Shown here: positions 17,901 to 54,498 of the stretch, piece after piece
Numbering within the stretch: position 1 is the stretch's first letter
Layout of the letters: the number at the start of each line of letters is the position of its first letter
DNA from: Takakia lepidozioides
Lineage: Eukaryota > Plantae > Bryophyta
Length of the DNA stretch: 64,000 nt
Direction: 5' to 3'
NCBI GenBank assembly: GCA_030704615.1
Contig: CM060731.1
Location: 18,104,001-18,168,000 of the forward strand
Program-made: the position numbers and the translations under genes
Notes under the pieces: generated by a model
What the model saw: only the letters and a program-made list of their open reading frames with translations
Database searches by the model: none
What the model was told of the DNA's origin: nothing

Positions 17901-19074
17901 TTGTCCTGCAAAACAGATGTCGTGTGATTATTGTGTACACCCGACCATATCCCGGATGCGGAACTTCCATCGTACCTCTAGTCGAACGTGAAGCATTCTT
18001 GCAGATTCGACCTTGCCAAAGTGTTATGCAGTTGGAGGGAAACGTCCAAACATCTTTCCATTCCATTTAGTGGGGTAAATGAGCTCCATGAGAAGACATT
18101 TGAGAACTACCAGGTTTCGGAGCACCTATAGGGACAATGGGGCATCTAACATTTACATGTATCAAATGTTGGATTGCAAACGGACAAAGCATGTCTAAGC
18201 CATGGACTTTTGAAACCAGATTCTGATCACTGTCTTTTCAACCATATTAAGTTTATGGACTCTAGAGAGGTCATGTGCACTTTCCAATTGCTCTAAAATA
18301 TTGAATGTTGGGGGCCAGTTTTCTGGACATTGTAATGATATGTTTATATAGACAAACTGATTTGTCATTTTGAACCTATCGACTAAATTATACACAAAAA
18401 ATCACATTTCTTCAAAAGTCCATAGCCTCTTCTCTTTTGTTCTTCTTTTGTGTTACCTTTTACTGAAAGGGTATAGGTTCTTGTTATCTCGAATGGCCCC
18501 AACAAATATGGATAAATAAGTCATGAAATCTATGTCAAAACATAACCCTGGTGGCAAATTAGCTATGCGAAGCTTCGGTGGACCGATAGAAAATTTTGTC
18601 GTAGGTAGCAGGTAGTGTGGACCCCATCATTTGAGGGGTTGGATGGACTTTCATGGACATCACCATCTGTCGTTTTGGGTTCACCCTATACATTTACCGA
18701 GCATAACAAGCATGTAAGAGGAGCAGTCCACTTTAGCAAAATGTAGTATAAATCGCTGTAGTAGAATGCTAAACCCAAAAAGGTCCTTAGCAATTATTAT
18801 CTTTTGGCGGAGGGTATTCTCATATTGCTTTGCTCTTCCCAGGGCTTATACGAGCGGTGGACAAACACTATACACCTTGAACATACACAGTGCATATGTT
18901 GAGCCAAATTATAATCACCACAAAGAACCCAAGCCCGAAGCTTTTAAACCTAACCTATACAAGTTTGCTAAATGGCTACGATCCATTGACTGTCCATCTC
19001 AACCAATCTCCATCACTTATGGCAAACCACCTCATTCTAAACTCAATCATACACTAGCTGTTAGAGTAAGACAA

Positions 19075-19487
19075 TGTCATGGTTTTAGTCATGGTTAACT
19101 AGAATTACCTACTTCTAGTTAACTAGGACATTTTGGATATATAAATGTGTATTTTGTGTGTTGGGACTTCATTTGGTCTCACATGCCAAGTGAGGTGTCA
19201 AGCCTCACTTGGGACATGGGGATAGGTTTTCCCCTTGTGAGGATAGAGGATGCTCATCTTCTTGTAGTTGAGCCTCCATGAGCCTCTCTCAACTCCATAG
19301 CTCTAGGTATTGAGAGGGAGTGTGTTGAGGGCTCTGTAGGGTGGATTCCCTTAGCAAGGGTGCCCTTGGCTTGACTTAGTTTATGTGATAGAGTGGATTT
19401 CACTTGGAAGGACTAGGGCTTGTTTTTAGTGTGATGCTTTGAGAGCTTTCATTGTCTTCCACTTCTCTTATTTCTCATCTCTTATCA
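19075..19487 (+). repeat. Terminal repeat A1 (5' LTR part)
   Basis: Direct repeat of 54586-55000 with a TATA-like GATATATAAA at ~19136-19145. Confidence 0.92.
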
Positions 19488-19554
19488 CTCCAAGAAGATC
19501 AGCTTATGCTTGTGAGTGCGGAGTGTAAGAATTAGTTTTGCATTTGTATGTTAA

Positions 19555-20933
19555 AGAGGTTGAGAGCTAGGAACCAGCCTTGGATGGTTCCACCTCCATG
19601 CAAACGTTCCCTCCTCTCATTGCTGAACAAGGTTATTGTATCTTGCCTCCCACTCATGTATGGATGGGTTGTTCTTCAGTATGAAGTCATGCGCTTGCTC
19701 AATCACCATGGTCGACAATTTTACCCTCTACAATTTTTTGGGCAAAACGATGTCCTTGGTTTGTGCATTCAGACTCTGCTGGGTAAATGGCTCCCTCGTT
19801 TTGTGGGTCCTGAAGGGGGATGGTGGAAACTGCTGGTCTCCAACAATATTTCCACTAGTTCTCCTCTCACGGCTGTCTCATGGGCCCCTTCCACTCGTTG
19901 GATCTCCCAAGGTTTTAGACACAAAACCTCGGGGTCCCCCCTATGGGCCTCTATCTCGGGTTCTTCCTCTTCCTTCCACATCCGAGGAGCTTCCTCATCC
20001 ACCCTTGCCATGTACTCCGTGCAATAGAACAACATAGACGCCTCCGCCATGCTACCCTCCGGGTGCGCCATTTGTCTTACAAATGCAACGCTCAAAGAAG
20101 TACATCCACCGAGAATGAATGGGGCCAGCAATCGAAGCCTCTTCCACTAAGTGCATTATCAAGTGCACTTGGATATCAAAGAAAGAGGGAGGAAGGTTCA
20201 TCTCCAACATACACATTACCTCCGCCGCCTCCTTCTTCATGCTTTGAAAATGCTTCCTCCAACTCTTTGGAGCAAATCCACTGGAACAAGCCTCCCAATC
20301 TATACATTGTCTCGCAAACCTTGGGAGTCAATGTCCCACGAACTGCAATGGGCAAAATGTCTTGCAAAATATTGTGGTAGTCATGAGATTTCAAACCATG
20401 GACCCCGTCGTCTTCGCTGAACTTCATACGGAGGGATGACCCATAACCAGTTGGTGTTCGGATAGCACTTATGGTGGCTATCACTTTCTTGTATTCTTCA
20501 TTTGTCCATTGCCAAGGTGCGCGCCTATACTTCCACCGTACAACACCCTTGGGGTCCACACCATTTTGTTCGGCCCATAGACGGCGCATGCGACCCTGCT
20601 CCTCAAGCTCCTTTCTAACACCAAGAGAATCTCTTTTTGCAGCCACTCCCTTCTTTGCCGGCGTGCCATGAAGAACTCGAAAAAAGGACAAACAGACATT
20701 CTTCTCAATATGCATGGGATCTAGAAGATGACGAATCTTCAGGTCCTACATATACCCCCACCCGCAAATACTTACACAAATATTTTGACATGAAAGTTAC
20801 AATGTAACTCATACAAAATGTGCAATATCATATGCATGCATAAGGATATTGATGGTGTTTTTGTGGAATATATACCACCCAATATGGCAACTCGTAAAAG
20901 ATTGAAAGTCGCTTTATGCCGGGCATCTGTTAA
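19555..20933 (-). pseudogene. CACTA (En/Spm) transposase fragment, antisense inside the retroelement leader
   Basis: LDPMHIEKNVC, GLKSHDYHNILQ, LPPSFFDIQVHLIMHLVEE, RWMYFFER and PEGSMAE (TNP2/DUF4218-type motifs); retains an intron-like gap at ~20748-20875; no TIRs. Confidence 0.85.
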
Positions 20934-21539
20934 GGTATCAACATTGAAAGGACTTAGTGAAATTTAAGGGCCTTTAGAGGACTGTTTGGAAGATATTTGA
21001 GGGCCCTTGGAGGAGTGTTTGGAGGATTTTTGGGGTCCTTGGAGGAGTATTGGAGGACCCTTCGAGGAGCTTCGGTGGACAATGTTGAAGAGCTCTTGAA
21101 GGATTGATTGAGGGATATTTGAAGAATACTTGCCACGGCCATACAAGCGAGTGGATAGAGACAGGAGGGAGAGTGGTGGGATGAGAGCATTCTGGGGTTA
21201 GGAATTGCTTTAGTTTCTCTTCCCCATAGTCTTTCACCCTCTGTGTAGGCCAAAACCTTTCCGTAGATGGAGGCAAGAGTCAGTCCGGGTTTGGGCTGGG
21301 GTGTCCTTGCAGGAGCGACACTGTGGAGTGTTTTTGGTGTGGGGGAGTTACTGTCTTGATTTTCTTGTGTTTGGATCCCCTCCACACCTGCATGCTTGAT
21401 TGTGCGTCATGTTAGCTTTGTGTGGGCGCTTGTTTTCATAGGAGGTTGGTTCGGATTTGATCACCGGCCAATCCTAGAGTATTCTGTCGGTGGTGAGGCT
21501 GGAGTGATGACCAGCAAGACCGCCAGTGTTTCTTCTATG

Positions 21540-22876
21540 GTGAGGTTGGGTTGATGACCAGCAGACCATAGGAGTGTTTGCGGTGGATGCAGGTGCAGGT
21601 ACAGGTCTACGTTAAAAACCTATTATTCCTGCTTGAACCACTAGCCGCAACAGGTTCTCTACCCGGTTACCTTGTGAAAAGTGGGGATCCGTGCCATTGT
21701 TGTGGGACACAATGGAGGAGATGTATGGAGCTACCAAGGGGCCACATAGGTACTCTGGAGCTATGGGCACCATCGAGCTTGATGACTTCATACAAGAGTT
21801 TGACAGTTGGTGTGATTTGTAGCAAATGCGCAATCCACAACTGTTTACGCCCTTTATAGCGCGGAAGGGGCTATTCCAGCACCTTGAGGGGCCATCCATG
21901 GATGATTACCCTGAATTTAGGCGGGGATATGCGGTGGAGATTGAGGAGTGACGAGAGTATTGGTCACCTAACTATGTCTCCATCACTAGAGGCACAAGGG
22001 CAGCAACGACACTAGCAGCTACACAAACATCTCCAACTGCAAGCACTAGTAGTGGGACAAGTGGTATAGGAGCTGGGAAATCCACTCAAGCTCCTGCTGC
22101 AGCACTAGCACCCGTGCCTGCCTTTAACCCAGTTGTGGAGTTCTTCAAGGAGTTGAGGAGAAACTACCAAGGGATAACGACAGAGAAGTTGCGGAGCTTG
22201 CAATAGTTCCAACGAAGGCCTACTGAGAGTTTGAGGGAGGCTTACACTCGCATGAGGCGCTTGATAAATGTAACCCAAGGGATTACAGAAGCTCAGGTAG
22301 TCCAATTTTGATATAGGATCCTGGACAAGGAGCTGAGGAGAAGGGTGCGGGATGCAACTCTCCTACAAGTAGCCCAACCCACCTTAGCAAACGTATTTTT
22401 GCTGGTAGAGCGGATAGAACTCAATATGGTGGAGGAGCGGGTGGTTATGGTGGGATTTGGCAAGGTGACACAACGAAGTGGAGTTCCTAGCCAACAACAA
22501 TCAACTCCCCAACATGCTCAAGGCAATAAGGGGGCTCAGATGAAGCCTAGGGAAGGCCATACAAGATCTCAGATTCAGAGGTCTCTCCCTTCATTCTCAG
22601 GCCAGCAACAGACGAGTGTGTCATGCATGTTGGGATTGTGGAGGACCCCATATCAAGAAGGATTGCCCGGAGAGAGACAAAGGGCCGGCACATGCACAGC
22701 CTACACAACTACACTGTGGGCATTGTGGAAAGTATGGGCATGAGGAGGCCCATTGTTATGACTTGCATCTTGAGCTACGGCCAGGCCAGTTCCAAGGAAA
22801 CAATGGTGGCCGAGGACGAGGCAATGTAGTCCAGAGAGGTAGAGGAGGTAGCACAGGGTCAGGGTCAAGGTCATGA
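21540..22876 (+). pseudogene. Retrotransposon gag (degenerate) with two zinc knuckles
   Basis: FQRRPTESLREAYTRMRRL (gag major-homology-like), knuckles CWDCGGPHIKKDC and CGHCGKYGHEEAHC, then an RGG-rich tail; in-frame stops. Confidence 0.8.
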
Positions 22877-23619
22877 CCAAGGCATGGTAGATAGACTTGC
22901 CCAGCTAGAGCAACATCTTGCTGCCATGGCCATTACTCATGTTGTACCAGCTCCAAGGCCTGAGGTTCAACCCACCTGCACAACCTCCTATGCCTAGGGA
23001 AGACCAGATTGGTATGGGCTTCATGTGTGGAGCCGCACTTGCAGGGCCATTGCATGTATTGGACTCTGCTGTTGCTGTCACTCGAGCAGCAACGCGTGCT
23101 CCTAAGCCAAGAGGAGCGGATGTGGATTTTGATCCACAAAGGGGGGAAGCAAGTCATCAGACAAGGCTTCCACAGTCCTTTACATTGGCTAAGACAATGC
23201 CAACTACGCCATCGATGGCACCCGCTCGCCCAAATGTGTCAGAGGTAGAGCCACGAGTGTCATTGGGGAGAGTAGGTGTGGCTCGGGAAATGCCAGTGGG
23301 TGGTGCTGCAAAGCAAGGTACAGCCAGTACATTGTTAGGGGCGGCTACGGCTGTTTGTCAAGCTCCATTGTTTTCTGCAATGACCATTGCAATGTCGAGG
23401 ATTCGGCCAGCTGCTGTGTTCAGACTAGCAGCTAGACTCTGTGAGAGTGGTGATGCATCGGCACTATCTGCGGAGATAGCAGATAAGGTGCACTCTATGG
23501 ATGCTTTGGATTCGAGGGTGAAGTCAGCCACAGCTGCGCCATGGAAAGCAGCAGCTATAAGGTTGCAGGAGTTGCCAACTAGGCCAGCCAGCACAGCATG
23601 GTGACTCCTGGAGTAGTCC

Positions 23620-24040
23620 TGGTGGACAATCACGATGGAGTGTTTCAGTTGGGTGGTCCAACCGAGAGGAGGTATAGGCCACTGCGGGTTTGTTGGACTC
23701 GGGAGCACAGCCTTTGATATTGGGGAGAGCAGCAATTGCAGGCTTAGGCCTTACAAAGGCAGACTTGGAGCCTTGCCCTTTCCAAATTCAAACATCTTTG
23801 GGTGGTTCAGAGAAGGCGCGAGGGATTACAGGCCATGAGCGCTTCATTTGACTTCAGCCGGATCATCCTACGGACGGCTCACTAAAGCTATTGTTACGGA
23901 TGCGATGTCCTATGATGTGTTTGATGGTGGGGCTGTGTTGTACCCCATGGGATTTACTCTGGACTTTTGGGAGGAAACAGCATCCTACAAGCCGGAGTGG
24001 CAGTCAGGGGATGGCCGACGTGCACTGCTCCCAGTGCGGT
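23620..24040 (+). pseudogene. Retroviral-type aspartic protease (degenerate)
   Basis: LLDSGAQPLILG at ~23690-23725 and downstream YDVFDGGAVL (an ILG-equivalent motif). Confidence 0.75.
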
Positions 24041-24399
24041 TTATTGGGAATGTAGCGGTGGATCATAGGAACATGATGCCCATATTGGCTGCATTCTCAG
24101 GGGTCGTGGCTTGGGGTGGTGAGCTCTTGGAGGGTAATAGCCATGCAGATGATAGGCCACCATCTGATGAGGACAAACAACTGGCATACAAGGCTGAGTT
24201 GCTTCCTCATGTGCCTGTTCATATTCCACTGTGGGGTACGGTTGGGAATTTGTAGCGAGTAGCAGACGAGTGTGTGCACCAAACATGGCATGAGGCTTTT
24301 CCATTGATGAATGAGGAGAGTTTAGTGACATCACCTGGACCTCCTCAGTTAGCTCATTTGGACACAATGCCCATTACCTGGCAACCACCTGACTCAGGG

Positions 24400-24668
24400 A
24401 TTTGCTTGCTAGACATGTTTGGAGGCATGAGCACTGGGCTTAGAGGAGTGTTGTAAGCTGGGATTAAAGTACGAAAGTACTTGTATGTGGAGAAGGATGA
24501 GATAGCTTGGCGTATTTCTATGCGCCACGTTGCCTTGCTCACACACCAGTATCCTGAGTTGCTACCTCTCTCAGCAATTCAATGGTACCAAAAGGCCTTG
24601 CTAGCAGACATTACCTTGCTGGGGGCGGATGATTTGGGCCGGCATGGTGCAATTGACTTGGTGATAGC
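24400..24668 (+). pseudogene. C5 cytosine methyltransferase, N-terminal half (motifs I-III and start of IV)
   Basis: ICLLDMFGGMSTG (I, SAM-binding FxG), YLYVEKD (II), ADITLL (III), IDLVIA (start of IV); cut by CACTA-1. Confidence 0.85.
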
Positions 24669-27600
24669 CACTAGAAGCATTCGTGTCTTTTCCGAATCGA
24701 CTACATGTCCAAAACCACTGAGGGAACAACTTTGAGATGTTTGTTACTACTGCACAGTCGTAACGGATAAATTCACATTTCTAATGGCGGATAGAAGTTG
24801 CATCAATGAATCCGCAGTCGACACAATATTCGCGGCGATTTAATTCAATTACGTAAATTGTTTTTTTTTTTAAACAGCAATTACAAGTGGTTTTAAGCAC
24901 TAGAGAACGACTCTTAACAACTAGGCATTCATTGCACACCCTATTCAAAAATGGAATTTTTATAAGTGCTCCACATGACTCATGACGTGGAATATTTTAA
25001 TGTATTTTAGGGCTTGTGTGGCTCGTAGAGATTGTTCTAATCGTCGGATGTAAAATGATCTAAGGGTGGAAGAGTAACTTCGTCCTTTGCCTGAATTTGT
25101 CTAAGTGTTGGGAGAGGGATGGAGGCTTGAGAGAGAGACGAACAAGTGATGCGAGAAGGACGAAGACCAAATCGAGGCCCATGTCCTGTTGTTGCAAGCG
25201 TTTATGGCGTCAAGGGCGCATTATGTGCAAATGTGGGCTCTTGGCTCCCCTTTGTACCATGATTTGGTATTCTTCCTGATGATTACAAGGTTGTGGGAAT
25301 CAGCTTGGTCTTAGCAACCCATATTTTAATCTCTGCCCGCTCAGCTGCACCGTGGTGGTTCTTACGAACCAATCCCACATTACCTGACTAGAGATACAAG
25401 CAGCACGCACAAGAGGTCTTCTTGGGTTCATGGTCAGTCTAATCCGCAATGGGTCATGACACAAGGTAGAGGACAATGTGGTGAGGGCACCTTCTTCTTC
25501 GAGCTATTTCAGCCTGTTTTGCCGAGATGTAGTGTCGTGGAGTGCGATGCTTGCAGGTTATGTACAGCAGGGACGTGGGATGGAGGCTTTGGAGACCTAT
25601 GAAGTTGCGAAGGGAGAGTTTGATAACATGGCTGAACAAGATGTTGTCTCAAGGAACACGCTGAATCTCGCAAGATATGGCCAGCATGTGTGCGGGATGA
25701 GGGCATTGGAGACATATGAGCAAATGTTGAGAAGAGGTGCAGCCTGACCGGGTCACGTTCATTTGTGTTTGCAATGCATGTGCAAACCTGGCAGCCCTGG
25801 AGACTTGGTAAAGGGCAAAGAGGTCCATCGTGACATTGTCAAAGCTGGAACTGTACCAGATGTAACAATACCTCGTCGACATGTATGCCAAACGTGGGAG
25901 CATTCCCTTGTGGACAAGGAGTGTTTAACAATATGGCTGAGCGAAATGTGGTGTGGTGGAACGTGATGATCGCAGGACATGCACAACATGGGCGGGGATT
26001 GCGGGTTTTGGAGACCTATGAGCAAATGATGTGGGTCTAGGGGGTGAAGCCCGAGCACATTACGTTTGTTTGTGTTTGTAGTGCATGTGCGAGCCTGTTG
26101 GAGAAGGGCAAAGAGGTCCATGGTTGCATCGTCAAAGCTGGAATTGTGGTAGATGTCATTCTGAACATGAATACCCTTCTAGATAGGGAGTGTTCAACAA
26201 TATGGCTGAGCGAAATGTGGTGTCGTGGAAAGCGATGATCGCAGGACATGCACAACAGGGGCGGGGATTGTAGGTTTTGGAGACCAGTTGATGTGGGAGG
26301 GGGTGAAGTCCAACCACATTACGTTCAGAGAGTTCAAATGCCTCTCCACCATGACCTTGCTTAGCTAACCATGCCTTGTTGATGTTGTTGTCTTGCACTT
26401 GAGCTGTTTTTGGACACTGGCTGGAACATCCACAAGGCGGCTCTGCTCGAGAGAGAAATCAGCTTGAATGCAGGGGCAGATTTTGAGATCATAATCGCCA
26501 CTCAGAACGTTGTTCTTTGCACCGGCATGGCATGTCAGCATGCATATCAGCCCAAACTCATTACTCCGTGAGCCTTCCACTGCTGGAGTGTGCCCATTCA
26601 AGCCAGATCTTCAAAACGCAGGGATGGAACGGGGTTTTGAAACCAGCATTGCCTAATTGGATACCCAATTCAGCTCCGCATCTTGGTCCATTGATCTGCT
26701 GCACATTGTGAAGTTTTCTGCCCGTTCACCGCAAGTTGAAGAAGGAGTATTCTTAAAACACGGGTACTCATAATCTGAAAATGGCTCCAGCTTATGTTGC
26801 TTGAGTGCGGATATGAGTGTGGTTGGCTTGGCAGCTTTACATCTGGTCCATCCCACTCGATATGATGAGCAGGTTCAGCTTGACTTCTCTCACACAAAAG
26901 ACGCTGCCAAGATGGGGTTTGCTGCCCTAGATGACTTCTCGTCGTTGTTCTGGGCTGCAACATACAATTAATCTGGCCCATGGCGAGGGGCCTTGCCTTC
27001 CACCAATCATCTGTAAGTCCTGTGAAACTGTTTTTGTGGCAGTTTCTAAGCAGTGGGCAGCGATGGTGGGCTGTTGTAGGATTTGATGAACTCAATGCCG
27101 TGTACTGACAGCAACCCCTCATCTCTTATGCAAGCATTCAACAAGCCAAGTTGACTGCAGAGCATATTCAGCCCCCCACGTTTCTAGTTGCCTAATGTTC
27201 TTCATCTCCTGGGCAGAGCATTTTCCAGGGTCTCCATCTGTGATGACACACTATCTTCTCATGTGGTTCAGCGTTTGGTCTTGCTCTTGTTTGCACCACC
27301 CCCAATGAAGGGCAGTTCCCACCTGCTTGATTCTCTCTATATGGTTGTCTTGGGTCTTGGCAGGGTTTCCCACAACCGCCTTTCCTTTTCAGACTGCCAG
27401 TCATCAGCCTCGTTCTCCAATGCTTCACTTTCTTCCCAAGTGAAGTGCTCTCCTCTTTTATGCTTCAACGTCCCTGCATATGTCTTTTCCTTCATCTCCC
27501 GTGGTGCTTTCGAATGAATGAGCACTGATTTACATCTGTTGGCAACATTTACGGTGTCCCTTTCCTTGCATGCCACTGCAGGCTCGCATTGACTTTCTTG

Positions 27601-30600
27601 GCAGGGAAGTCTCCTCCTTCTCCCTCATTTTCTGGCTTTGTTGGTGCCCCCACTCACCATGCTATCAGGGCTGCACTTATTTTATGGTGTTGCGCCAGCC
27701 AAGGGCGATCTTTCACTGGTCCGATTGTTGGCAACAGCTGATTGGAGTCTTCTTGGTAGAGTCTCCCACGAGCTCCCATCAATTTCAGGCATCAGGTTTT
27801 CTACCCTGCCCTTCCACTTTTCATAAGCGAGGTGCCTGTCTTCCTCCCTTTCACTCTTCAGCCTCTCAGGCAGATTTTTCTTCATGCGATTGCTGCTCCC
27901 ATACTTCCAGTCCTTGTTTAATTTTCTCCAGCCATCACCCTCAGATTTGACAAGGTATTGCTGCCCTTCCTTGTGTCTTTCCTCACTCCCAGCTGCTGGT
28001 TTTATCCAGATTCACCTCTCATCCTTGCCTGGGGTTTTGCTTGCCAAACAGCCCTTGTGTGGGGAACTTCAACGAAAGGCAACATCTCATTCTCAGCTCC
28101 TGTCTTTGTACCTCTTTGCAGCAGTCCAGCCTCGGGTGCCTCACTTTCTGATTGCTGGGTTGCATTCTTCGCCGCCAACCTTTGACAAGAAAGTGTGCTC
28201 CATCTTCCTCATCTCCTACTGGTTCCCTTGATGCTTCACCTCGTATGTCTTCCTCCTCATGTTTTACCAGCAGCTCCCATGCTTGAATTGCTACTTTTCC
28301 TCGTAGTTGATCTTGTGCTTTCCTTTTTCTCCATAGCCTAATCAACAGTTTTGTCTTGGCAGCTCCCTTGCCATGAGTGCCTTGTCTCACTGCATTTCCC
28401 TTGGCTGCCCACCATCCGTGGAGTCTTTCTTGCACTATTCTGACCCTCGTTGGCATGCACTTTGCTGCGATGCCCCACATGTATTTGTTGCTCCCTTTAA
28501 TCATCAACATAGTGCTCCAGAGCCAGTTCCTCATTGTTGACCAGTTGACCTTCTCAGCCCTTGGACCCCATTTTCCCTTCTCCCATGTTGCCTCGTCTTT
28601 CTGCTTCATCATTTGCTTTACTTGCACGATGTTGCTTCTTCCCTACAGCTCATCATGTGTTGTGGCTCTTTCCCATGTTGCACTCACTCCCATCATACGT
28701 TGTGCAGTTGATAAGACTGAGATGAGTTGATAGGGGGAGGGCTTGCTGGTGTATGTTGTCCGATAGGCCCCATGCACAGAGTCAAAGCTGGAAGTCAGCC
28801 TTGCAAGGACCCAAGTGAGAGAAGTCTGGTGGGGGTAGCATCTTGGGGGATGGCAGTTAGGGCAATGTGTGTCTAGGGCAATATATGTCATAGCAGCGGG
28901 TGATGTGCTGCCAATTTTGAGGATAGAGACAGCCTTTAAGCTGTAGATTTGTATAAGTGGTTTCTTCTTACACATATTGCTCCCAGTTTGCCACAACTAG
29001 TTGTTTGCGTTTGTAGTGCATGTGCGAGCCTGCTGGGGAAGGGCAAAGAGGTCCATGGTTGCATCGTCAAAGCTGGAATTGTGGCAGATGTCATTCTGAA
29101 CAATACCATTGTGGACAGGGAGTGTTCAACAATATGGCTGAGCGAAGGATAGAGTGTAATGACTGCTAATGAGGGCACCTTCTTCAATTTCACCTTGTTT
29201 TCCCCTCTTATCAGAATCGCCCCTAATTATTCATGTTTGAATTCTGCAAGTTAGCTGGTTTAGTGAAGCTTTGATAGTTTGGAGTGACTTTGACATGATT
29301 CTGCCAATGTGACAACAGGAAAGTATCAGAAACAGGTAACACAGAGATGAGAAGTTGTGGAATGAATATTTTTCTGACCCCAGTCAATGGTGGGACAATC
29401 GAGGCAAGAAGGTGAATGTTTGTTGGATTATAGAGAGTAGCAGATGCAATTGAGCGTAGGAACTAGTGTGATAAGTTGAGTTGGGTGCTTCCTAGAACAA
29501 GTCTAGGCTGTCATCGTCAACTGCTAGCAACAAGGCAAGGTTGTATGCATGATTCGTGCGAGGCATGGATAGTTCAAGGAGCAAGGATAGAGTGTGGGTG
29601 CAGATTCACCCAAGAGGTCCAGATTAACTGTGAAGCTACAAGAAACCTGCATGGGTAGATGGTCAACTGGCAGCAACGGCACAATTGATAAAATCAGACA
29701 TTGTTAATGAAGGCATCTTCTTCAGCACATTTCACCCTGTTTTTCCCTCTTATTAGAATCGGTCCAAAATTTCCATGTTGAATTATGCAAGTTAACTGGT
29801 TGAGTGAATCTAGTTTGGAGTGACTTTGACATGATACTGCTATGTGACAACAGGAAAGTATCAAAAAACAAGTAACAGACATGAGGAGAAGCTGTGGAAT
29901 GAATACTTTTCTGCCCCCAGTCAATGATGGGACAACCGAGGCAAAAAGATGAATGCCTGCTACATTTCAGAGAGTAGCAGACGCAATTGAGCATAGGAAC
30001 TAGTGTGATAAGCTGAGTTGGGTGTTTCCTAGAACAAATGTAGGTTGTCATTGTCAACTACTAGCAGCAAGGCAAGGATGAATGCATGATTTGTGCAGGG
30101 GCATGGATAGCTGAAGGAGCAGGGATAGAGTGTGGTCCAGATTCATCCTAGAGGGCCAAATTTCAAGCAAAAGATTTACCTATGATTCCCTGTGGATCAA
30201 TAACTACAAGAAACCTCCATGGGTAGATGGTCTATTCCGTGGAACTCACTGAAGTCTTGCATTATGAGGATCAGAACTGCTTGACTTGCACGAGGCCTTG
30301 ACCCTTAGGCAATCCCCAGAGCACAGTAGCTTTTGGGCTGCTTTTTTACTTTGTGTTTTTCATTTTGTCCCATAAGCTCTTTGAGCTTTCCGCAGATGTA
30401 ATAAAGTACCATTTTGTTTCATTTCATTCATTTTCATTTCATTTGTTTCATGGCATGTCTTTCATCGTTTGTGCATTTCTAATGCATGATTAGTTCTCTT
30501 GTATGGCATTACTAGTCGACTCACTACAAACACCAAAACTCCAAAGCATGAATCACTATGAATGATTGTTCAAGTACTTTCGAGCACTTCATGTAAAGTA

Positions 30601-31083
30601 GTAAAGCAGTGGTTGCGCCAACTTCCGCAGTCGCAATTGCCACTGGGCATGTAGCACTGCAAGTTATGTGGTCTACTACCACGTGGCGCCTCGGGCCCGT
30701 GGCCACGTGGCAGCAGTGGTGCTCGTCGTGGCACCGCCACGTCGGCATCCACATCGTCGTCCACGTCCGCGTCCATGTGTCACCGCGCTTCAGTGAGTCG
30801 GTCCACTCATCCGGAGGGAAAAGTCAAAGTCAGCCCAAAAGGTCAGACACACGGGCAGCCCGCCTGGTTACGCCACGTGGTTCTTCAACATTAATCGCAT
30901 TAATTGCTGAGCAGTTGTTCGCGCGTCTGCGTCCTTTACCACTCCAATCATTGGATGTCCAACCCAACTACCACGTCTGTTGTAACTAGTCTGTTGTAAC
31001 TTCCAGTTGATCCCAGTTTTTTGACTTTTACGACTCAAAATGAGTCGTTACCCCAGTGGTAAATGACACGAATGCTTCTAGTG
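24669..31083. mobile_element. CACTA-1: non-autonomous Pack-CACTA carrying PPR, PDF-exon and unidentified gene fragments
   Basis: 19-bp TIR CACTAGAAGCATTCGTGTC / GACACGAATGCTTCTAGTG; 3-bp TSD AGC (24666-24668, 31084-31086); removing it restores the DNMT frame. Confidence 0.95.
25530..26330 (+). pseudogene. PLS PPR fragments inside CACTA-1 (another piece at ~29000-29145)
   Basis: [24 protein letters not shown] and KPEHITFVCVCSACASLLEKGKEVHG. Confidence 0.85.
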
Positions 31084-31086
31084 AGC

Positions 31087-31760
31087 TGGATGGCCTTGCC
31101 AATGACACTCTCCTGCAGGTCATGGGAATGGCTTGCATGATGCAAGGTCGCATTTGTTTTGGGAGATGTTACGAGTGTTGCGTGACTTGCAGGGGAGACA
31201 AGTGCAACCTCCACCTTACATCCTGGAGAATGTTCCTCTCATGGGGGATTCTCGAGCCAGGGTTATGGCTAGTGTGCATCAGGTGCGGTCTTGGATTGGA
31301 CCAGCTGTATTATTGGATGCAGCTGCAGTGGTTTCACGGGCACATAGGCCTAGGTTGTGGTGGACCAATCTTGCACCACCAGAGTTGCTCAAAAGAGCCT
31401 ATGATTCCATTCAACGGCCACCCAACCTCACGGTTGAGGGCATTTTGTACTAATGGAGGCAACCACAGAGAGTGCGACATGGTGACTGTCCACCTTTAGC
31501 GGTGGTCAATCGAGTAGGGCAACCACGTGCGGCCTTGCCTACACTCATTCATAGTTTTTCCTTGTCTCATGCTTTTTGAGACAATGGTCCAAGGTTGATT
31601 TGGGACAATGTGCTACAGCAATTGGTGGAGCCTAATGCGGATGAGCGAGAGCGGGCAATGGGGTTTGCCACGGGCACTACAGCTGTGCTAGCTAAGTTAG
31701 AGGCATCACGACGCCAGGTGTTGGGTCAGGCAATGGATCTCAATTGCTTGACATGGGTCA
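31087..31760 (+). pseudogene. C5 cytosine methyltransferase, C-terminal half (motifs IV-X), DNMT3-like
   Basis: GWPCQ (catalytic Cys codon 31097-31099), GLHDARSHLFWE, YILENV, SRAHRPRLWWTNL, NADERERAMGF and RRQVLGQAMD. Confidence 0.88.
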
Positions 31761-32259
31761 TTGGCTTGTGCATGGCTGAGCAACAAAGATTACATTGGTG
31801 GCTACTTCTGCACTTCCATTGGATATTGCACCCTCTCTGCCAACCGGGACGGTGGAGGCAGTGAGTGGGGGCGAGCACAGGATCATGGAGTGCAAACATC
31901 CATGGCAAATGTGGGATGAGATGCGGAAAGAGAGAGACATTGGATCTCTCAAGGAGCAATATGAGGAGTGGGGAGAGCCATACACAGAGGATCAGTTAGA
32001 GGCCAAGGTGGCCAAGGCTCTTGAAGAGGTTGAGGATGTTTCTTTTGCGGAGGATGTTCTCAAGGTGGCTATGGCGGAGCAAGTGGAGGCTACGCCACAG
32101 TCAGGGTGGGCGGACAAGGCCCAAGAGGTTGCTATCTAGCAATCAAAGGATGCGTCTCCTACCTCCAAGCCTGGTGTACCCAAGGTTGTAGTCACTGAGG
32201 ACAATTGGGAACCAGATGTTGGACCTATAGTCACCGGAGGAGAGAGACGGAGGATCCGG

Positions 32260-32750
32260 CGATTTCTAAGGGCTTATAGAAATTGCTTTACCTTCAGTTT
32301 GAAGGATTTATGGAGTTTGAAGGGTCAAGAGATTCGTATTGATTTGACAAATGACACGCCAATTTTTCGAAGGCCCTACAAGTATGGTGACATGGAGAGG
32401 ACATTGATCCAGTCACGGACTATGGAGTTGTTCGAAGCTGGATTGGTGGAGTTGTCAGGTGGGGAGTATGCCTCGGCAACGGTGATGCCAGCTAAGAATG
32501 ATATCTATATGGCAATTGGACAGAAAGAAGGATGTGTGGGGACTATCATCCTGTGAACCGTCAGACTAAGTCTGATAGATATGCCATGTCAACTCCAGAA
32601 GAAATCTTTGATGCCATTGGGCATGCGAAGGTGTTTAGCACATTGGACTTATGATCGGGTTATCACCAGCTTCAAGAGTACGATTTTCAAGTGGTGCATC
32701 GAGCCGATATAGTCAACCAGGATGCGAATGGATTGAGTCGTAATTCATGC
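32260..32750 (+). pseudogene. Reverse transcriptase N-terminus fused by deletion to the end of RNase H
   Basis: PIFRRPYKY, RMCGDYHPVN and KVFSTLDL*SGYHQL run directly into QEYDFQVVHR; the YxDD region and most of RNase H are missing. Confidence 0.85.
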
Positions 32751-32962
32751 ATAAGTAAGCTTGATGATACATGAGCTCATTGGCATGGTGAGACGGACGA
32801 GGAGATGGTGCCAGGATGGCACGCATCTGCCTTTTTGTGCATTCTAGGAATGGGAGCTCAAGCTGGTCAACCCCATGGGATTGGTCATGGAGATAGTGTG
32901 CATGACGATCCATAGATCAATGAGGAGCTTGGTGGTGCTAAGGATGTCACGAAGATGCAGCA

Positions 32963-33991
32963 GTGTTGGCCTATCTTCGTGCCGGAGAGACAGCAGCTAG
33001 TGTGACTGCAAAAGGGAGAGATCGGATCCTACAACGTGCCAAGAGGTTCAAATGGGAGGGGACTCACCTACTCCGTATATGGGAGGATGGACGAGTGAGG
33101 ATTGTGCCTCATCCAACACAACAAGCGCGATTGGTACGCCATGCCCATGAGGAGTTGGGACATTTTAGGGGTGCGGCTCACTCATAGTTTGCTGCAAGGG
33201 CAGTACTGGTGGCGGGGCATGCACATGGATGTGCAGCAGTTAGTGGCAAGATGCATGGTGTGTGATAGAGTGCGGGCTTCTTTCAACGCCCCTACTCCAC
33301 AATTGCATCCTTTACCCATTATGGTTTGGGCTATCGTTGGAGCCTTGACTTTGCAGGCCCATTACCACTAACGATTCGCCATAACAAGTATGTGCTAGTG
33401 ATGGTGGAACATTTCTCCAAATGGATTGAACTGGTGGGATTGCCTGACAAGGCAAGTGATGGGGCTGCGTATGCATTCTTAGATCGAGTGCTTAGCCAAT
33501 TTGGTGCTCCAGCCGAGGTACTCACGGACCAAGGGAGAGAGTTCTTGGGGGGAGTTTCAGGCTTTGTGTGAGCAAGCCTTGATAGACCACCGCACTACTT
33601 TTCAGGATCATCCCGAGGCTGATGGCTTGGCGAAGAGAGTTGTTCAGACAGTCAAGAGGGGTTTGCGCAAGTACGGTTGGCAAAAGGGACATCTGGGAGA
33701 TTGGGACCTTTAGCTGCTTTGGTTGGCTATGGGCTATAGGTTCAGCAAACAAGCGTCACTTACCTCTTTCTCACCTTATTTTCTTATCTTCGGCCGAGAG
33801 CCCGATTTGCCTGCATGTATTCGCAGGGAGGCTGCAGTAGTCCTTGACCTTGATGATCCGGATGTGTGGACACAAGCGTGTGACCAGCGGGCAGAGTTAT
33901 TCAAGAGAGTCATGTCTATGGCTTTTGAGAACCTTGCTATTGCCCAACACCGAGACACATTGATGTATGTCACCATACGTGGAGGCGGATA
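32963..33991 (+). pseudogene. Gypsy integrase (HHCC and DDE core), frameshifted, cut by CACTA-3
   Basis: AHEELGHF...CMVC, WSLDFAGPLP, VLTDQGREF, HPEADGLAKR and SPYFLIFGREP. Confidence 0.9.
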
Positions 33992-34589
33992 CACTACTAC
34001 AGATTAACGTTTTTATGACAACAGGTGATATAAACCTTGGTAACCATGACTATATATGTGACTACGAAGTGATGAAACCCGCATTTTAATATATTTTAAT
34101 CTAATGCAGTCATACGTTTTACTACATGACTAGGAGCCGCGGTCAACCATTGTTGACCAAGAACATAGGCTTGGTTTATATAACTAGTAGTCATACGCAA
34201 TACTACACGTCAGACACGTGCCATATAAGCTTATGACTAAATGACTACACCACTACTACACATTGATGACATGCCATAGAAGCTTATGACTACATGACTA
34301 CAGGAGGTTTCACAGCTCTGTTTATATGACTACATCACTACACGTGGCATCTTAAGATATATACATGAATGGGTTCATCCATTGGATGACCTCATCCATC
34401 TATCTTCGAAGCACTTGTGTCAATAGAATGACACAAAGTGCAAAAAGTTAAAAAATTCAAAAAGTTGCTTTAGGGTTGCCCACGTTCAGCCGCGAACAGA
34501 GAGGGCTGGGACTTAGCCTCCTTTTGCCCGACTTTTGCCTCCCTCGCTACCATATGTTTTCTTAGTATCGAGCCGTGAGAACTTGGAAC

Positions 34590-36831
34590 AAGATGATCGC
34601 AGGATATGCAATGGAGGGGCGTGGGATTGAGGCTTTGCAACCTATTCTTGAGCAACTTATGCACCTTTCTTGAGTTTATTCTTGAAAATGATGCAGGAAA
34701 GGCGAGGATATGCACAGCGGGGGTGTGGTATAGAGGCTTCGGAGACGTATGAGCAAATAATGCGGGAAGGGGTGAAGCCGGACCGGGTCACGTTCGTTTG
34801 TGTTTGCAATGCGTATGCAAGCCTGACAACCCTGGAGAAGGGTAAAAGGTCCATGGTGCCATTGTCAAATTTGGAATTGTACCCGATGTCATTCTAAACA
34901 ATACCCTCGTATGCCAAATGTGGCAGTATTGAGGATACAAAGGGAGTGTTTGAGAATATGGCTGAACGAACTATCGTGTCCTGGAGTGTGATGATCGCGG
35001 GATATTCCCCAGCATGGATATGGGATGGAGGCATTGGAGACCTATGAGCAAATGATGCGGGAAGGGGTAAAGCCAGACCTGGTCACATTCCTTTGTATAT
35101 GCAATGCGTGTGCGAGCCTGGCAGCCCTAGAAAAGGGCAAAGAGGTTCATGGTGACATCATCAGAGCTGGAATTGTACTCGGCATCATGCTGAACAATAC
35201 CCTCGTGGACATGTATGCGAAATGTGGGTGCATCGAGGATGCGAAGGGAGTTTGCAACAATGGCTGAACGATGCTTGCGGGTATGCACAGCAAGGCCGCG
35301 GGAAGGAGGCTTTGGAGACCTACGATCAAATGATGGCGGAAGGGGTGAAGCCCGACCATATCACGTTTGCATTTGCAATGCATGTGCAAGCCTGATAGCC
35401 CTGGAAAAGGGCAAAGAGGTCCATGGTGACATTGTCAGAGCTGGAACTGACTCTGGAGACCTATGGACAAATGATGTGGGAAGGGGTGCAGCCTGACCAG
35501 GTAACGTTTGTTTGCATTTGCAGTGCGTGTGCGAGCTTGGCTGCCCTGGAAAAGGGCAAAAAGGTCCATGTTGACATCATGAAAGCTGACATCGTCCTAG
35601 GTTTCATTCTGAGCAACACTCTCTTGGACATGTATGCCAAATGGAGGATGCAAGGGAGCCCCGAGGTCCATCATCTGGAGTAGTCTCTCCACTGGTGATC
35701 CGAAAATGTATACCTTTGTTCTGTTGCGTCTTAAGAGAACACGGTGGATTCAATGCTGTAGTAACTGCTATCCCATATCATCACCTGGTTCTCTTTCTAC
35801 TAAATCCTTTCAGCTTTCTTCGCCGTCTTCTTCTTCTGCTCCCGCTTTTGCCTTGCACTTACCACTTCACTCTTTTCCTTATTTGATAATATGGCTGAAT
35901 GAAATGTGGTGTCATGGAGTGCGATGATTGCAGGATATGCCCAACATGGTTGTAGTAGGGAGGCCCTGCAATTACTTGAAGGAATGAAAAAGGAAGGCTT
36001 GAAGCCAAACAATATCACCTTTATGTGTGTTCTCCAAGCATGTAGCCATGGGGGCCTAGTGGATGAAGGAAGACACTATTTTGAATCCTTATATCGAGAT
36101 TATGGCCTCATTCCTACAGTGGAGCACATTAGCTGCATGGTGGACCTTATTGGCCGTGCTGGGTGGTTGGACGAGGCTGAGGACTTCATTAACAAAATGC
36201 CAGTCCAACCAGATGCTGTAGTGTGGAAAGCCTTGCTTGGTGCCTGCAGAATTCATGGCAATGTGGAGGTGGCAGAACGCGCGACAAAATCTATTCTCAA
36301 GTGGGATCAACAAGATGCTCCATCTTAATATGTGTTGTTATCAAATATTTATGCCGCAGCTGGCAGGTGGGATGATACTGCAAAGGTGAGGAAAATGATG
36401 GAAGTCAGAGGTGTCAGAAAGCAGCCAGGTCACTGCTCCATTGAGATTGGCAATGGGGTGCACACTTTTGTAGTAGATGACAACTTGCATCCACAAATTG
36501 AGGAAATCCAAGCTGAGTTGAGAAGATTGTCTTGGCAGATGAAGGAGGAGGGATATGTGTCTGACACGCGCTTCGTGTTGCATGATGTGGAGGAGGAGGC
36601 AAAGGAATTTTCTCTTTGCCACCACAGTGAGAAGCTGGCCATTGCTTTTGGGCTGATCAGCACAGCCCCAGGGACGCCTCTTCGAATCATCAAGAACCTT
36701 CGGGTATGTGGTGACTCCACACGGCCACTAAGTTCATCTCAAAGATTGTTGGACGAGCAATTATTGTACGGGATGCCAACCCCTTTCACCACTTTGAAGA
36801 TGGGGTTTATTCTTGTGGGGAGTACTGGTGA
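34590..36831 (+). pseudogene. PLS-E1-E2-DYW PPR RNA-editing-factor pseudogene
   Basis: PLS repeats; HISCMVDLIGRAG; stop at 36326; KQPGHCSIEI; [13 protein letters not shown]; LRVCGD with a 1-nt deletion; ...[14 protein letters not shown] ending 36831. A non-PPR insert lies at ~35650-35880. Confidence 0.92.
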
Positions 36832-37877
36832 AATGATGTTTCTTTTTGAAAGGTGAGAGTGTCTTGCTTCATTGATTACTCTCCTTGGTTCATTAACCTC
36901 TCCCTGCAAATGGTGTCTGTGATGTATTGTTGAGGATATTTCCTCTGTGGCATACCAATCCTCAAGAGAGCGAATTGTGGGGTCTACCCACCAGGAGGAT
37001 GAAACTGAGATTGAAATTGCATGTATGCCTGCACTGCTGCTTTAACTCCTGATTTGGTGGCGGATGTGACACATGGCTGTCGTTGGACTAACACATTTGT
37101 GGTTCAAAGAAAAAATTGGGTGCGAGTGAGAAATAAATCTTAAATTTCCGATAGTGACAGGTGCTAGGTGTAAAGGGGGTGATCTTCACATGTTCTCAAC
37201 CTGTGAACAAAAATGTATGTATGATTTGTTGGCTATCCTCTGATTTCTCTAGCCATATTCTCTACATTCCAATATGGTGTGACCATACGATGTCTGCTAC
37301 TCGGGTTTGAATCGGGCTCGCTTTCTGTTTGTCATACACCCCATTCCACATGCTGCCATGTGTTGCTTCTATCCTAATTTCTCATCTATTCACTTCTGAT
37401 GGAACAAGAAAGAAGGCACAAGAAAAATGCACATGCCACTTGAAGGTGGAGTTTAGGTTCGAGTTTATACAAACCTGTTGCTATGTTGTAGCTAAATTGT
37501 TTCTGAACAGTACTCTCGTGGACATGTATGCAAAATGTGGGTGCATCGAGGATGCAAAGGGAGTGTTCAACAGTATGGCTGAACGAGATGTGTTGTCGTG
37601 GAGTGCAATGATTGTAGGATATGCATAGCAAGGGCGCGGGATGGAGGCTTTGGAGACCTATGAGCACCTTCTTCAATACATTTCAGCCTGTTTCCCTTGT
37701 TATCAGAGTCGTCCCTCAATTTTCAGGTTAAATTCTGCAAGTTAGCTCGTTGGTGTAAAAAGGTGAATGCCTGTTGGAAGCTCAACATAGGAACTTGAGT
37801 GATAAGTAGGGTTAGGGTGTTTGCTGGAATAGAGAGGCAAAGATAGCTGAAGGAGCAGGGATAGAGAGTGGGTCCAA

Positions 37878-37973
37878 ATTCATCCGAGAGGGCCATATTT
37901 CAAGCACAAGATTACGTATGATTCCCTGTGGATCAATAGCTACAAGAAACCTACATGGGTAGATGGTCAACTG
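37878..37973 (+). pseudogene. Second half of the OSB-type PDF motif (best-preserved copy)
   Basis: IHPRGPYFKHKITYDSLWINSYKKPTWVDGQL. Other copies at ~29604-29670, 30141-30232 and 38438-38530, and on the minus strand at ~40395-40460, 40930-41000 and 53455-53500 (HPKGPDFK). Confidence 0.75.
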
Positions 37974-54240: not shown

Positions 54241-54498
54241 TGGGACATAACAGTGGTGAGGTTGACAAGTGATCCAAGGTCTAGCTAACGAGAGTTCAAT
54301 GCCAGGGACACCCAATTGAAGCCATGGATTGCAGGAAGGCGAGTAACGATGGGGCTACTTTTGCACCCGACTTCTTGACCTATTGACTTCAGATACTGGG
54401 ACTTGGGCGATTGATGACCAAAGTGATGATCTTATTGGGATGGATACTTGTCAGCTATCCGGTGTTAGATGGACCTAATCACCAGCTAGGGGGGCGAT

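What the first reader, a model, noticed from the sequence alone, without database searches (positions are those of the whole stretch)
24400..31760. Gypsy retrotransposon encoding its own DNMT3-like cytosine methyltransferase between protease and RT
Seen: removing CACTA-1 and one AGC TSD gives ...IDLVIA|GWPCQ*HSPAG...FWE...YILENV...RAHRPRLWWTNL...ERAMGF...RRQVLG, preceded by LLDMFGG / YVEKD / ADI. These are C5-MTase motifs I-X in linear order, inside pol. Known: linear order and the AHR.R..W.NL and ER..GF motifs resemble DNMT3 rather than the circularly permuted plant DRM enzymes. I recall DNMT-bearing retrotransposons being reported from dinoflagellates and a charophyte alga, but they are not a standard feature of land-plant LTR elements. 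Inference: the family may methylate its own cDNA or insertion site. The domain is invisible to ORF scans because it is split by 6.4 kb. This copy is dead (stops at 24454 and 31103).
Basis: partly seen in the sequence, partly recalled or inferred. Interest (0 to 1): 0.95.

Follow-up and report, generated by a model that had tools for sequence, protein, structure and literature searches.

The report
Dead Gypsy retrotransposon carrying DNMT3 methyltransferase
This is a broken, 36-kb-stretched copy of a very abundant land-plant jumping gene whose polyprotein carries its own DNMT3-type DNA-methylating enzyme; elements of this kind have so far been published from only one green alga.

Summary
A CACTA transposon (24669-31083, TSD AGC) splits a C5 cytosine methyltransferase domain. 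The two halves join exactly at one residue of intact relatives' polyproteins. The domain lies between protease and RT of a Ty3/Gypsy element.

By profile search and predicted fold it is DNMT3-type and not circularly permuted like DRM.

The element is larger than reported, 19075-55086. A second CACTA (33992-53834, TSD ATA) separates integrase from a C-terminal PHD finger. The terminal repeats are "split direct repeats" (A1-internal-B1-GC-A2-B2), with a 4-bp TSD. This is the arrangement published for KnitGypsy-Dnmt3 of Klebsormidium.

The copy is dead: four stops in the DNMT domain, a frameshift, and loss of most of RT and RNase H.

It is not a one-off capture. Intact PR-DNMT-RT polyproteins exist in metagenomes and Closterium, degenerate ones in Marchantia and Riccia. 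About 12,000 DNA contigs of the same organism match this stretch.

A second architecture (RT-RH-DNMT-INT-PHD) forms a separate clade.

The kind is known. The land-plant occurrence appears unpublished, but this scan has already noted it many times on other DNA of this genome. Enzyme activity and role remain untested.

The parts
19071..19074 (+). Left target-site duplication, ACAA
   Evidence: The same 4 nt follow B2 at 55087-55090.
19075..19487 (+). Repeat A1 (TGTCA...TTATCA), the left terminal repeat
   Evidence: 96% identical to A2 over 416 columns.
19488..21639 (+). Unassigned 2.1-kb leader between A1 and gag. It holds a minus-strand ORF at 20176-20715.
   Evidence: ORF list. The ORF has no Pfam match. 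Possibly foreign DNA; not resolved.
21640..22880 (+). gag-like region, broken by stops and frameshifts, with one canonical CX2CX4HX4C knuckle
   Evidence: Three-frame reading. No Pfam hit on the knuckle ORF, so this rests on reading the sequence only.
23678..24252 (+). Aspartic protease region (LLDSGA active-site motif) and the linker to DNMT
   Evidence: tblastn of P0294 residues 671-719 and 740 onwards; three-frame reading.
24256..24668 (+). DNMT3-like domain, N-terminal half (motif I LLDMFGG, YVEKD, IDLVI), with stop TAA at 24454
24669..31083 (.). CACTA-1 transposon inserted into DNMT motif IV. TSD AGC at 24666-68 and 31084-86. It carries PPR repeat fragments.
31087..31861 (+). DNMT3-like domain, C-terminal half (PCQ, FWE, ENV, RAHRPRLWWTNL, ALPTL, ERERAMGF, LGQAMD), with stops at 31103, 31451 and 31577
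32140..32675 (+). Linker and N-terminal part of reverse transcriptase
   Evidence: tblastn of P0294 residues 1324-1495.
32670..32762 (+). Deletion scar: the rest of RT and RNase H (about 375 aa) are missing
   Evidence: P0294 residues 1495-1870 are unmatched. A related contig of run X7 has 984 letters here (table 5).
32954..33991 (+). Integrase (H2C2 zinc domain and rve core), with stops and frameshifts
   Evidence: Pfam PF17921 at 37.5 bits and PF00665 at 44.9 bits; tblastn.
33992..53834 (.). CACTA-2 transposon, 19,843 bp, TSD ATA at 33989-91 and 53835-37. It holds PPR-DYW sequences and a nested LTR element.
53836..54240 (+). C-terminal end of Pol with a PHD finger and the stop codon of the polyprotein
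   Evidence: Pfam PF00628 at 38.8 bits. P0294 residues 2215-2344 continue directly from the integrase part. Translation.
54484..54497 (+). Polypurine tract (AGCTAGGGGGGCGA) immediately before B1
   Evidence: Sequence. The same tract precedes B1 in the Riccia copy.
54498..54583 (+). Repeat B1 (TTGTGG...CGACA), followed by GC at 54584-85
   Evidence: 97.7% identical to B2.
54586..55000 (+). Repeat A2
55001..55086 (+). Repeat B2, the right end of the element, followed by TSD ACAA at 55087-90

Best explanation
What it is. Window 19075-55086 is one old, dead insertion of a Ty3/Gypsy-type retrotransposon of the Gypsy-DNMT3 kind. Its single gag-pol polyprotein reads gag, protease, DNMT3-type C5 cytosine methyltransferase, RT, RNase H, integrase, PHD finger. 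The element is bounded by split direct repeats (A1-internal-B1-GC-A2-B2) with TG...CA ends and a 4-bp target duplication.

Damage after insertion. Two CACTA transposons landed in it, one inside methyltransferase motif IV and one between integrase and PHD. Most of RT and RNase H was deleted. Stops and frameshifts accumulated.

How the family most likely works (inferred, not shown). The polyprotein is cut by its protease. The freed or Pol-linked DNMT uses S-adenosylmethionine to methylate cytosines of the element's own new cDNA or of the chromatin at the integration site. The PHD finger on the integrase reads a histone H3 tail state and guides where this happens. I put about 40% on self-methylation of cDNA or of the new insertion. 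The remainder is split between action on host DNA in trans, a role on RNA, and a non-catalytic role.
For: Shown:
- The two DNMT halves join exactly across CACTA-1, and the whole element is collinear with intact polyproteins.
- The motifs are conserved against 11 relatives.
- A profile of 12 family DNMT domains hits DNMT3A at 5e-22, DNMT3B and 3C near 1e-19, DRM at 2e-11 (only in permuted order) and HhaI at 5e-10.
- The window piece alone hits only DNMT3A, 3B and 3C.
- An AlphaFold model of a relative's domain (pLDDT 89) has DNMT3A, 3B or 3C as all top 50 PDB matches, TM 0.81-0.85 by target length.
- PHD, H2C2 and rve pass the Pfam cut-offs.
- The split repeats, polypurine tract and TSD can be read directly. 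The same PPT-B-GC-A-B layout and the CACGACA-GC-TGTCA junction occur in a Riccia copy.
- The arrangement A-coding-B-A-B is the one published for KnitGypsy-Dnmt3.

Family-wide presence:
- Intact 2188-2374-aa ORFs with PR-DNMT-RT exist in metagenomes, and the same order occurs in Closterium proteins.
- Marchantia and Riccia copies are 61-64% identical in the DNMT domain.
- The DNMT and integrase trees give the same split, and the same clade of the window copy with the liverwort and L002 copies.
- 12,265 DNA contigs of the same organism lie on 31087-34013, with dozens per site in the DNMT part.
Against: - No enzyme activity has been shown for any Gypsy-DNMT3. The Klebsormidium domain gave no methylation in yeast, a result its authors called inconclusive.
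- Most family members have GWECQ instead of the usual PCQ context in motif IV.
- CpG depletion of the element (observed/expected 0.41) matches the whole window (0.47). It therefore says nothing about self-methylation.
- Every land-plant copy I fetched is degenerate.
- No tree with canonical DNMT3, DRM or Klebsormidium sequences could be built, because I had no reference sequences for them.
Confidence: 0.9

Rival explanations
1. The domain is retained in the family but does not methylate DNA. It would act instead as a DNA- or RNA-binding module, a decoy for host silencing factors, or an RNA methyltransferase.
For: The Klebsormidium Gypsy-DNMT3 domain gave no DNA methylation in yeast. Motif IV reads GWECQ in most members, with glutamate where C5 methyltransferases usually have proline.
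Against: The catalytic Cys, ENV, the RxR of motif VIII and the glycines of motif I are invariant or nearly so across both architecture classes, at 43% mean identity. The predicted fold superposes on active DNMT3 catalytic domains. The yeast result was called inconclusive by its authors, because human DNMT3B also failed in that assay.
Confidence: 0.12
2. A one-off capture: this single copy picked up a fragment of the host DNMT3 gene, for instance by template switching or through the gene-fragment-carrying CACTA elements around it.
For: Both CACTA elements in the window carry host PPR gene fragments, so gene capture does occur in this region.
Against: The DNMT halves lie outside the CACTA element, in frame order with PR and RT. 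Intact relatives have the same order in one ORF. The DNMT and integrase trees agree. Dozens of other DNA contigs of the same organism cover each checked site of the DNMT part.
Confidence: 0.02
3. A host DNMT3 pseudogene that happens to be flanked by pieces of a Gypsy element after nested insertions.
For: The region is a dense nest of transposons.
Against: There are no element ends or target duplications between PR, DNMT and RT. The match to single polyproteins is continuous from residue 671 to 1495 apart from the CACTA insertion. There are no introns and no PWWP or ADD domains. The closest relatives are retrotransposon copies, not host enzymes.
Confidence: 0.02

Closest known systems
KnitGypsy-Dnmt3 of Klebsormidium nitens (de Mendoza et al. 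2018, PMC5890265)
   Same: A non-permuted DNMT3-related domain sits inside the Pol ORF of an LTR Gypsy element. The repeat arrangement is A-coding-B-A-B, which is otherwise typical of DIRS elements. The domain is conserved across copies.
   Different: The host here is a land plant with DYW-type PPR genes, not a charophyte alga. This copy is dead. [quoted passage not shown] The paper's text does not mention a PHD finger.
Animal and plant DNMT3 de novo methyltransferases (DNMT3A, 3B, 3C; Physcomitrium DNMT3)
   Same: Motifs I-X are in linear order. These enzymes are the best sequence-profile and fold matches. TM-scores are 0.81-0.85 by target length.
   Different: There is no PWWP or ADD domain. 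The domain is embedded in a retrotransposon polyprotein, and the histone-reader candidate is a PHD finger at the far C-terminus of Pol. About 22% identity. Motif IV is often GWECQ.
Plant DRM methyltransferases
   Same: They belong to the same DNMT3/DRM superfamily. They are the best single-sequence PDB hit for one intact relative.
   Different: DRM is circularly permuted: the match comes as two stretches in swapped order. The family profile scores DRM ten orders of magnitude worse than DNMT3A.
SymbioDIRS-Dnmt3 of Symbiodinium and DIRS/Ngaro split direct repeats
   Same: A DNMT3 domain inside Pol, and A-coding-B-A-B repeats.
   Different: Those elements use a tyrosine recombinase. This one has a DDE (rve) integrase, TG...CA ends and a target-site duplication.
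Chromoviruses (Gypsy elements with an integrase-linked chromodomain)
   Same: A chromatin-reader domain is fused to the C-terminus of the integrase.

Membership tests
C5 cytosine DNA methyltransferase (Pfam PF00145) | Motif I, FxGxG, the SAM-binding loop | tested here: met
   LLDMFGGMSTGL at about 24403-24438, aligned to the family motif.
C5 cytosine DNA methyltransferase (Pfam PF00145) | Motif IV catalytic Pro-Cys, motif VI ENV, motif VIII RxR | tested here: met
   GWPCQ (31088-31102, followed by a stop), YILENV and AHRPRLWWTNL are all aligned to invariant family columns.
C5 cytosine DNA methyltransferase (Pfam PF00145) | A score above Pfam's gathering cut-off | tested here: inconclusive
   The largest uninterrupted piece scores 20.7 bits against a cut-off of 22. 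Intact relatives pass: P0060 at 46.1 and P0018 at 30.5 bits. The joined peptide could not be submitted because it has no reference.
DNMT3 (as opposed to DRM, DNMT1, DNMT2 or bacterial enzymes) | Non-permuted order of motifs I-X | tested here: met
   The family profile aligns collinearly with DNMT3A (9-249 and 291-334). DRM matches only in swapped order.
DNMT3 (as opposed to DRM, DNMT1, DNMT2 or bacterial enzymes) | Closest solved structures by sequence and by fold are DNMT3 | tested here: met
   Window piece: DNMT3A at 6.6e-5, and only DNMT3 chains below E 0.1. Family profile: DNMT3A at 5e-22. Model of P0294:941-1298: all top 50 matches are DNMT3A, 3B or 3C.
DNMT3 (as opposed to DRM, DNMT1, DNMT2 or bacterial enzymes) | Placement inside the DNMT3 clade in a tree with outgroups | not tested
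   No canonical DNMT3, DRM or Klebsormidium sequences were available by reference.
DNMT3 (as opposed to DRM, DNMT1, DNMT2 or bacterial enzymes) | PWWP and/or ADD reader domains N-terminal to the catalytic domain | tested here: not met
   The domain is flanked by protease and RT. The only reader-type domain is a PHD finger at the Pol C-terminus.
Ty3/Gypsy LTR retrotransposon | Pol order PR-RT-RH-INT with an H2C2 plus rve integrase | tested here: met
   The order is seen in this copy, with RH deleted. It is complete in relatives.
Ty3/Gypsy LTR retrotransposon | Two identical full LTRs with TG...CA ends and a TSD | tested here: inconclusive
   The ends are TGTCA...CGACA and the TSD is ACAA. However, the repeats are split (A1 ... 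B1-GC-A2-B2), not two full LTRs.
Gypsy-DNMT3 (KnitGypsy-Dnmt3 type) | A DNMT3-related domain inside the Pol ORF of a Gypsy element | tested here: met
Gypsy-DNMT3 (KnitGypsy-Dnmt3 type) | Repeat arrangement A-coding-B-A-B | tested here: met
   A1 19075-19487, B1 54498-54583, A2 54586-55000, B2 55001-55086. The published description is quoted.
Gypsy-DNMT3 (KnitGypsy-Dnmt3 type) | Sequence kinship with the Klebsormidium copies | not tested
   No Klebsormidium protein appeared by name.
CACTA (En/Spm) transposon (the two insertions) | CACTA... terminal inverted repeats and a 3-bp TSD | tested here: met
   CACTA-1. CACTA-2.

The most novel reading that the evidence does not exclude
A very abundant land-plant Gypsy lineage, present in this genome and in Marchantia and Riccia, is or recently was active. 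It carries a working writer-reader pair (a DNMT3-type methyltransferase plus an integrase-linked PHD finger) and replicates through DIRS-like split direct repeats while using a DDE integrase. The element would deposit cytosine methylation on its own new insertions or at PHD-selected chromatin. Part of de novo methylation in early-diverging land plants would then be transposon-encoded.
Probability: 0.2. Interest if true: 0.8.

Novelty: new member of a known kind. Interest (0 to 1): 0.5.

Why it matters
Cytosine methylation is the host's main weapon against transposons, so a transposon that carries its own de novo methyltransferase is counter-intuitive. Only one Gypsy case has been published, in a charophyte alga, and no activity has been shown for it.

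This work shows that the same kind of element, with the same odd split repeats, is hugely repeated in a land-plant genome. It also has relatives in the model liverwort Marchantia. That widens the known host range, and adds a PHD reader finger to the picture.

It also separates two ancient architectures, PR-DNMT-RT and RH-DNMT-INT, which follow both the DNMT tree and the integrase tree.

The copy in this window is itself inert and has no functional consequence beyond its bulk.

Tried and rejected
- Pfam on the N-terminal DNMT pieces, the protease piece, the RT piece and the gag knuckle ORF gave no hits. Those parts rest on tblastn to relatives or on reading the sequence.
- A first direct-repeat search limited to 10-50 kb missed the terminal repeats. 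The whole-window search found them.
- The species could not be named. Run and organism names are coded. The best named DYW-PPR hits are only about 60% identical: Sphagnum, Taxus and others. I can say only that the host is a land plant with DYW-type PPR genes.
- CpG observed/expected as a trace of self-methylation was uninformative. The element scores 0.41 and the window 0.47.
- Expression is unresolved. The two runs guessed to be RNA hold only 4-5 contigs, less than 95% alike, and their RNA status is itself a guess. I draw no conclusion about transcription.
- A1 could not be found upstream in the Riccia locus, and no repeats were found in the metagenome contig L001. The full split-repeat layout is therefore shown only for the window copy, and its right half for Riccia.
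- The claim in earlier notes of this scan that liverworts hold intact copies was not reproduced. The Marchantia and Riccia loci I fetched are degenerate.
- dN/dS was not attempted. The available copies are about 60% identical at protein level, so synonymous sites are saturated.
- One-off capture and host-pseudogene readings were rejected (see the rival explanations).
Full report
**1. Observation**

A CACTA transposon occupies 24669-31083. Its 23-nt terminal inverted repeats are 96% complementary, and the triplet AGC is duplicated at 24666-68 and 31084-86.

- Left of the insertion, in frame 1, are LLDMFGG, YVEKD, ADI and IDLVI.
- Right of it, from 31088, are GWPCQ-stop-HSPAG, FWE, YILENV, RAHRPRLWWTNL, ERAMGF and RRQVLG.
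- The stops at 24454 and 31103 are real. Further stops lie at 24253, 31451 and 31577, and there is a frameshift near 31790-31860.

The joined peptide has no reference. I therefore searched its pieces separately, and read it through only inside scripts with X at every break.

Pfam PF00145 on the largest piece scored 20.7 bits, E 3e-4, just under the cut-off of 22. The match is nevertheless far beyond chance:

- phmmer of that 115-aa piece against 1.84 billion representative proteins gave 390 hits at E<=1e-3 and 94 at E<=1e-10, the best at 1.9e-40.
- tblastn with the intact polyprotein P0294 aligns residues 740-1039 up to base 24669 and residues 1039-1275 from base 31085. The same residue sits on both sides of the insertion.

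**2. The whole element**

P0294 is 2358 aa and reads PR-DNMT-RT-RH-INT-PHD. Its collinear matches to the window are:

| P0294 part | Window coordinates |
|---|---|
| PR and DNMT N-terminal half | 23684-24669 |
| DNMT C-terminal half | 31085-31777 |
| RT N-terminus | 32140-32675 |
| residues 1495-1870 (rest of RT, RNase H) | no match |
| integrase | 32954-34013 |
| residues 2215-2344, with the PHD finger | 53836-54225 |

The 19.8-kb gap between integrase and PHD is a second CACTA element, 33992-53834. Its ends are CACTACTACAG... and ...CTAGTG, and it duplicated ATA.

Pfam confirms the PHD finger (PF00628, 38.8 bits), the H2C2 zinc domain (37.5 bits) and the rve core (44.9 bits).

Upstream lie a protease with an LLDSGA motif and a gag-like region with one canonical CCHC knuckle. 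These two rest on reading the sequence only.

**3. The ends**

A whole-window repeat search found 19075-19487 (A1) and 54586-55000 (A2), 96% identical. An 86-nt repeat lies immediately before and immediately after A2: B1 at 54498-54583 and B2 at 55001-55086, 97.7% identical.

- The layout is A1-internal-PPT-B1-GC-A2-B2.
- The element ends are TGTCA...CGACA.
- The internal junction reads CGACA-GC-TGTCA.
- ACAA is duplicated at 19071-74 and 55087-90.

The Riccia sorocarpa relative (L004) has the same polypurine tract, the same B-GC-A-B layout and the same CACGACA-GC-TGTCA junction. The layout is therefore a family trait, not an accident of this copy.

De Mendoza et al. 2018 describe exactly this arrangement, "A-coding region-B-A-B", as typical of DIRS elements. 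They state that KnitGypsy-Dnmt3 has it despite a Gypsy domain composition.

Two earlier notes of this scan on neighbouring DNA had proposed the permuted repeats and the palindromic junction. I tested both here and they hold.

**4. What the methyltransferase is**

- The window piece alone matches only DNMT3A, 3B and 3C chains in the PDB, the best at 6.6e-5.
- A profile of 12 family domains (alignment A2) scores as follows:

| PDB family | E-value | Note |
|---|---|---|
| DNMT3A | 5e-22 | collinear through motifs I-X |
| DNMT3B / 3C | about 1e-19 | |
| DRM | 2e-11 | only part of the domain |
| M.HhaI | 5e-10 | |
| DNMT2 | about 1e-5 | |

- One intact relative matches DRM in two stretches in swapped order. 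This is direct evidence that the family is not permuted.
- An AlphaFold model of P0294:941-1298 has mean pLDDT 89.2 and pTM 0.88. All of its top 50 PDB matches are DNMT3A, 3B or 3C catalytic domains, at E about 1e-19 and TM 0.81-0.85 by target length.
- The window copy keeps motif I, the PCQ cysteine, ENV, the RxR of motif VIII, ERERAMGF and LGQAMD in register with its relatives.

I could not build a tree with canonical DNMT3, DRM or Klebsormidium sequences, because none was available by reference.

**5. Not a one-off capture**

- Intact ORFs of 2188-2374 aa with gag-PR-DNMT-RT-RH-INT occur on metagenome contigs. One example is L001, with a single 2327-aa gene.
- Closterium sp. NIES-53, -54 and -68 proteins show the same order.
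- Named land-plant relatives are Marchantia polymorpha AXG93_4079s1050 and Riccia sorocarpa R1sor_014310. Their loci hold degenerate PR-DNMT or DNMT-RT-RH-INT-PHD copies, 61-64% identical to the window's DNMT.
- In the same organism's DNA run, 12,265 contigs lie on 31087-34013 at 80% identity or better. All 30 bins are covered, with dozens of contigs at individual sites of the DNMT part.

The family is very abundant and carries the domain throughout.

**6. Two architectures**

Among the long hits, most read RT-RH-DNMT-INT-PHD (class A). One of these is a Monoraphidium neglectum protein. A minority read gag-PR-DNMT-RT-RH-INT, with or without PHD (class B). The window copy is class B.

- In a DNMT-domain tree of 112 rows, and independently in an integrase tree of 72 rows, each class is one side of a branch with support 99.
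- In the DNMT tree the window copy groups with L002, Marchantia and Riccia; in the integrase tree it groups with L002 and Riccia (the Marchantia locus has no integrase). Support is 99 in both.

The DNMT has thus co-diverged with the rest of Pol for a long time, and its position changed once. The trees are FastTree, midpoint-rooted and without outgroup, so they give no direction for that change.

**7. Host and state of the copy**

The window carries DYW-type PPR sequences (PF14432), which points to a land plant. The species is coded.

A1 and A2 differ by about 4%, so the insertion is not recent. Where this copy differs from the other contigs, it more often has A or T where they have G or C: 137 such sites against 70 of the opposite kind (table 1). 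This fits decay by deamination. CpG depletion is region-wide and gives no evidence for self-methylation.

A 2173-nt contig from a run guessed to be RNA carries 984 nt where this copy has 93 nt. That locates the RT/RNase H deletion. Because the run type is a guess, I make no claim about expression.

**8. Mechanism**

The architecture and the conservation of catalytic residues over deep divergence are shown.

What the enzyme does is inferred. The most likely role is methylation of the element's own cDNA or new insertion, with the PHD finger guiding the integrase-linked complex to a histone state.

The only published assay of a Gypsy-DNMT3 domain gave no methylation in yeast. Its authors called that inconclusive, because human DNMT3B also failed. 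A non-catalytic or RNA-directed role therefore remains open.

**9. Novelty**

The kind is published for Klebsormidium (PMC5890265). Later papers refer only to "streptophytes (Gypsy-DNMT3)".

My full-text searches found no report for land plants. The library lacks most subscription journals, so this is not proof of absence.

This scan has already noted the family hundreds of times in this genome, and several follow-ups reached the same reading.

The points specific to this window are:
- the exact CACTA split of motif IV;
- the second CACTA between integrase and PHD;
- a copy with both ends, showing the split repeats and the TSD;
- the split repeats conserved in Riccia;
- the class A / class B division.

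Noticed in passing
window 33992-53834: A 19.8-kb CACTA element (TSD ATA) is packed with PPR-DYW gene pieces. These include two adjacent ORFs (35906-36328 and 36332-36856) separated by one stop; the second carries E/DYW deaminase domains. This looks like gene-fragment capture by a CACTA element.
   Followed up: partly
window 41669-42263 and 49962-50553: A pair of 595-bp direct repeats, 97.8% identical, lies inside CACTA-2. It is probably the LTR pair of another, younger LTR retrotransposon nested there.
   Followed up: no
window 25523-26290 (inside CACTA-1): CACTA-1 also carries PPR repeat fragments. It shares 171-214-nt stretches (69-88% identical) with CACTA-2: 29346-29840 against 37982-38409.
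   Followed up: no
proteins P0014-P0336: DNMT-bearing Gypsy polyproteins fall into two architectures, RT-RH-DNMT-INT-PHD and gag-PR-DNMT-RT-RH-INT(-PHD). The two are cleanly separated in both the DNMT tree and the integrase tree. The first class includes a Monoraphidium neglectum (chlorophyte) protein. This suggests a much wider algal distribution than the one charophyte published.
   Followed up: partly
L004 13820-14410 (Riccia sorocarpa CM100797.1): The polypurine tract CAGCTAGGGGGGCGA and the junction CACGACA-GC-TGTCA are conserved between the Riccia copy and the window copy, although the A and B repeats themselves differ. This is a candidate integrase or strand-transfer recognition site.
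   Followed up: partly
window 54148-54165 (PHD finger): In this copy the PHD finger reads GWYMGC at the place where a C4HC3 finger has its histidine ligand, a further sign of decay. The position of the ligand rests on my knowledge of the PHD consensus, not on a residue-level alignment to relatives.
   Followed up: no
window 20176-20715, minus strand: A 179-aa ORF lies in the 2.1-kb stretch between repeat A1 and gag. It has no Pfam match. It may be a fragment of another transposon inserted into the leader.
   Followed up: partly
window 31700-33050 against run X7 record 16: A 2173-nt contig from a run guessed to be RNA matches the family at under 90% identity and includes the RT/RNase H part that is deleted here. 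If the run is truly RNA, some family members are transcribed.
   Followed up: no
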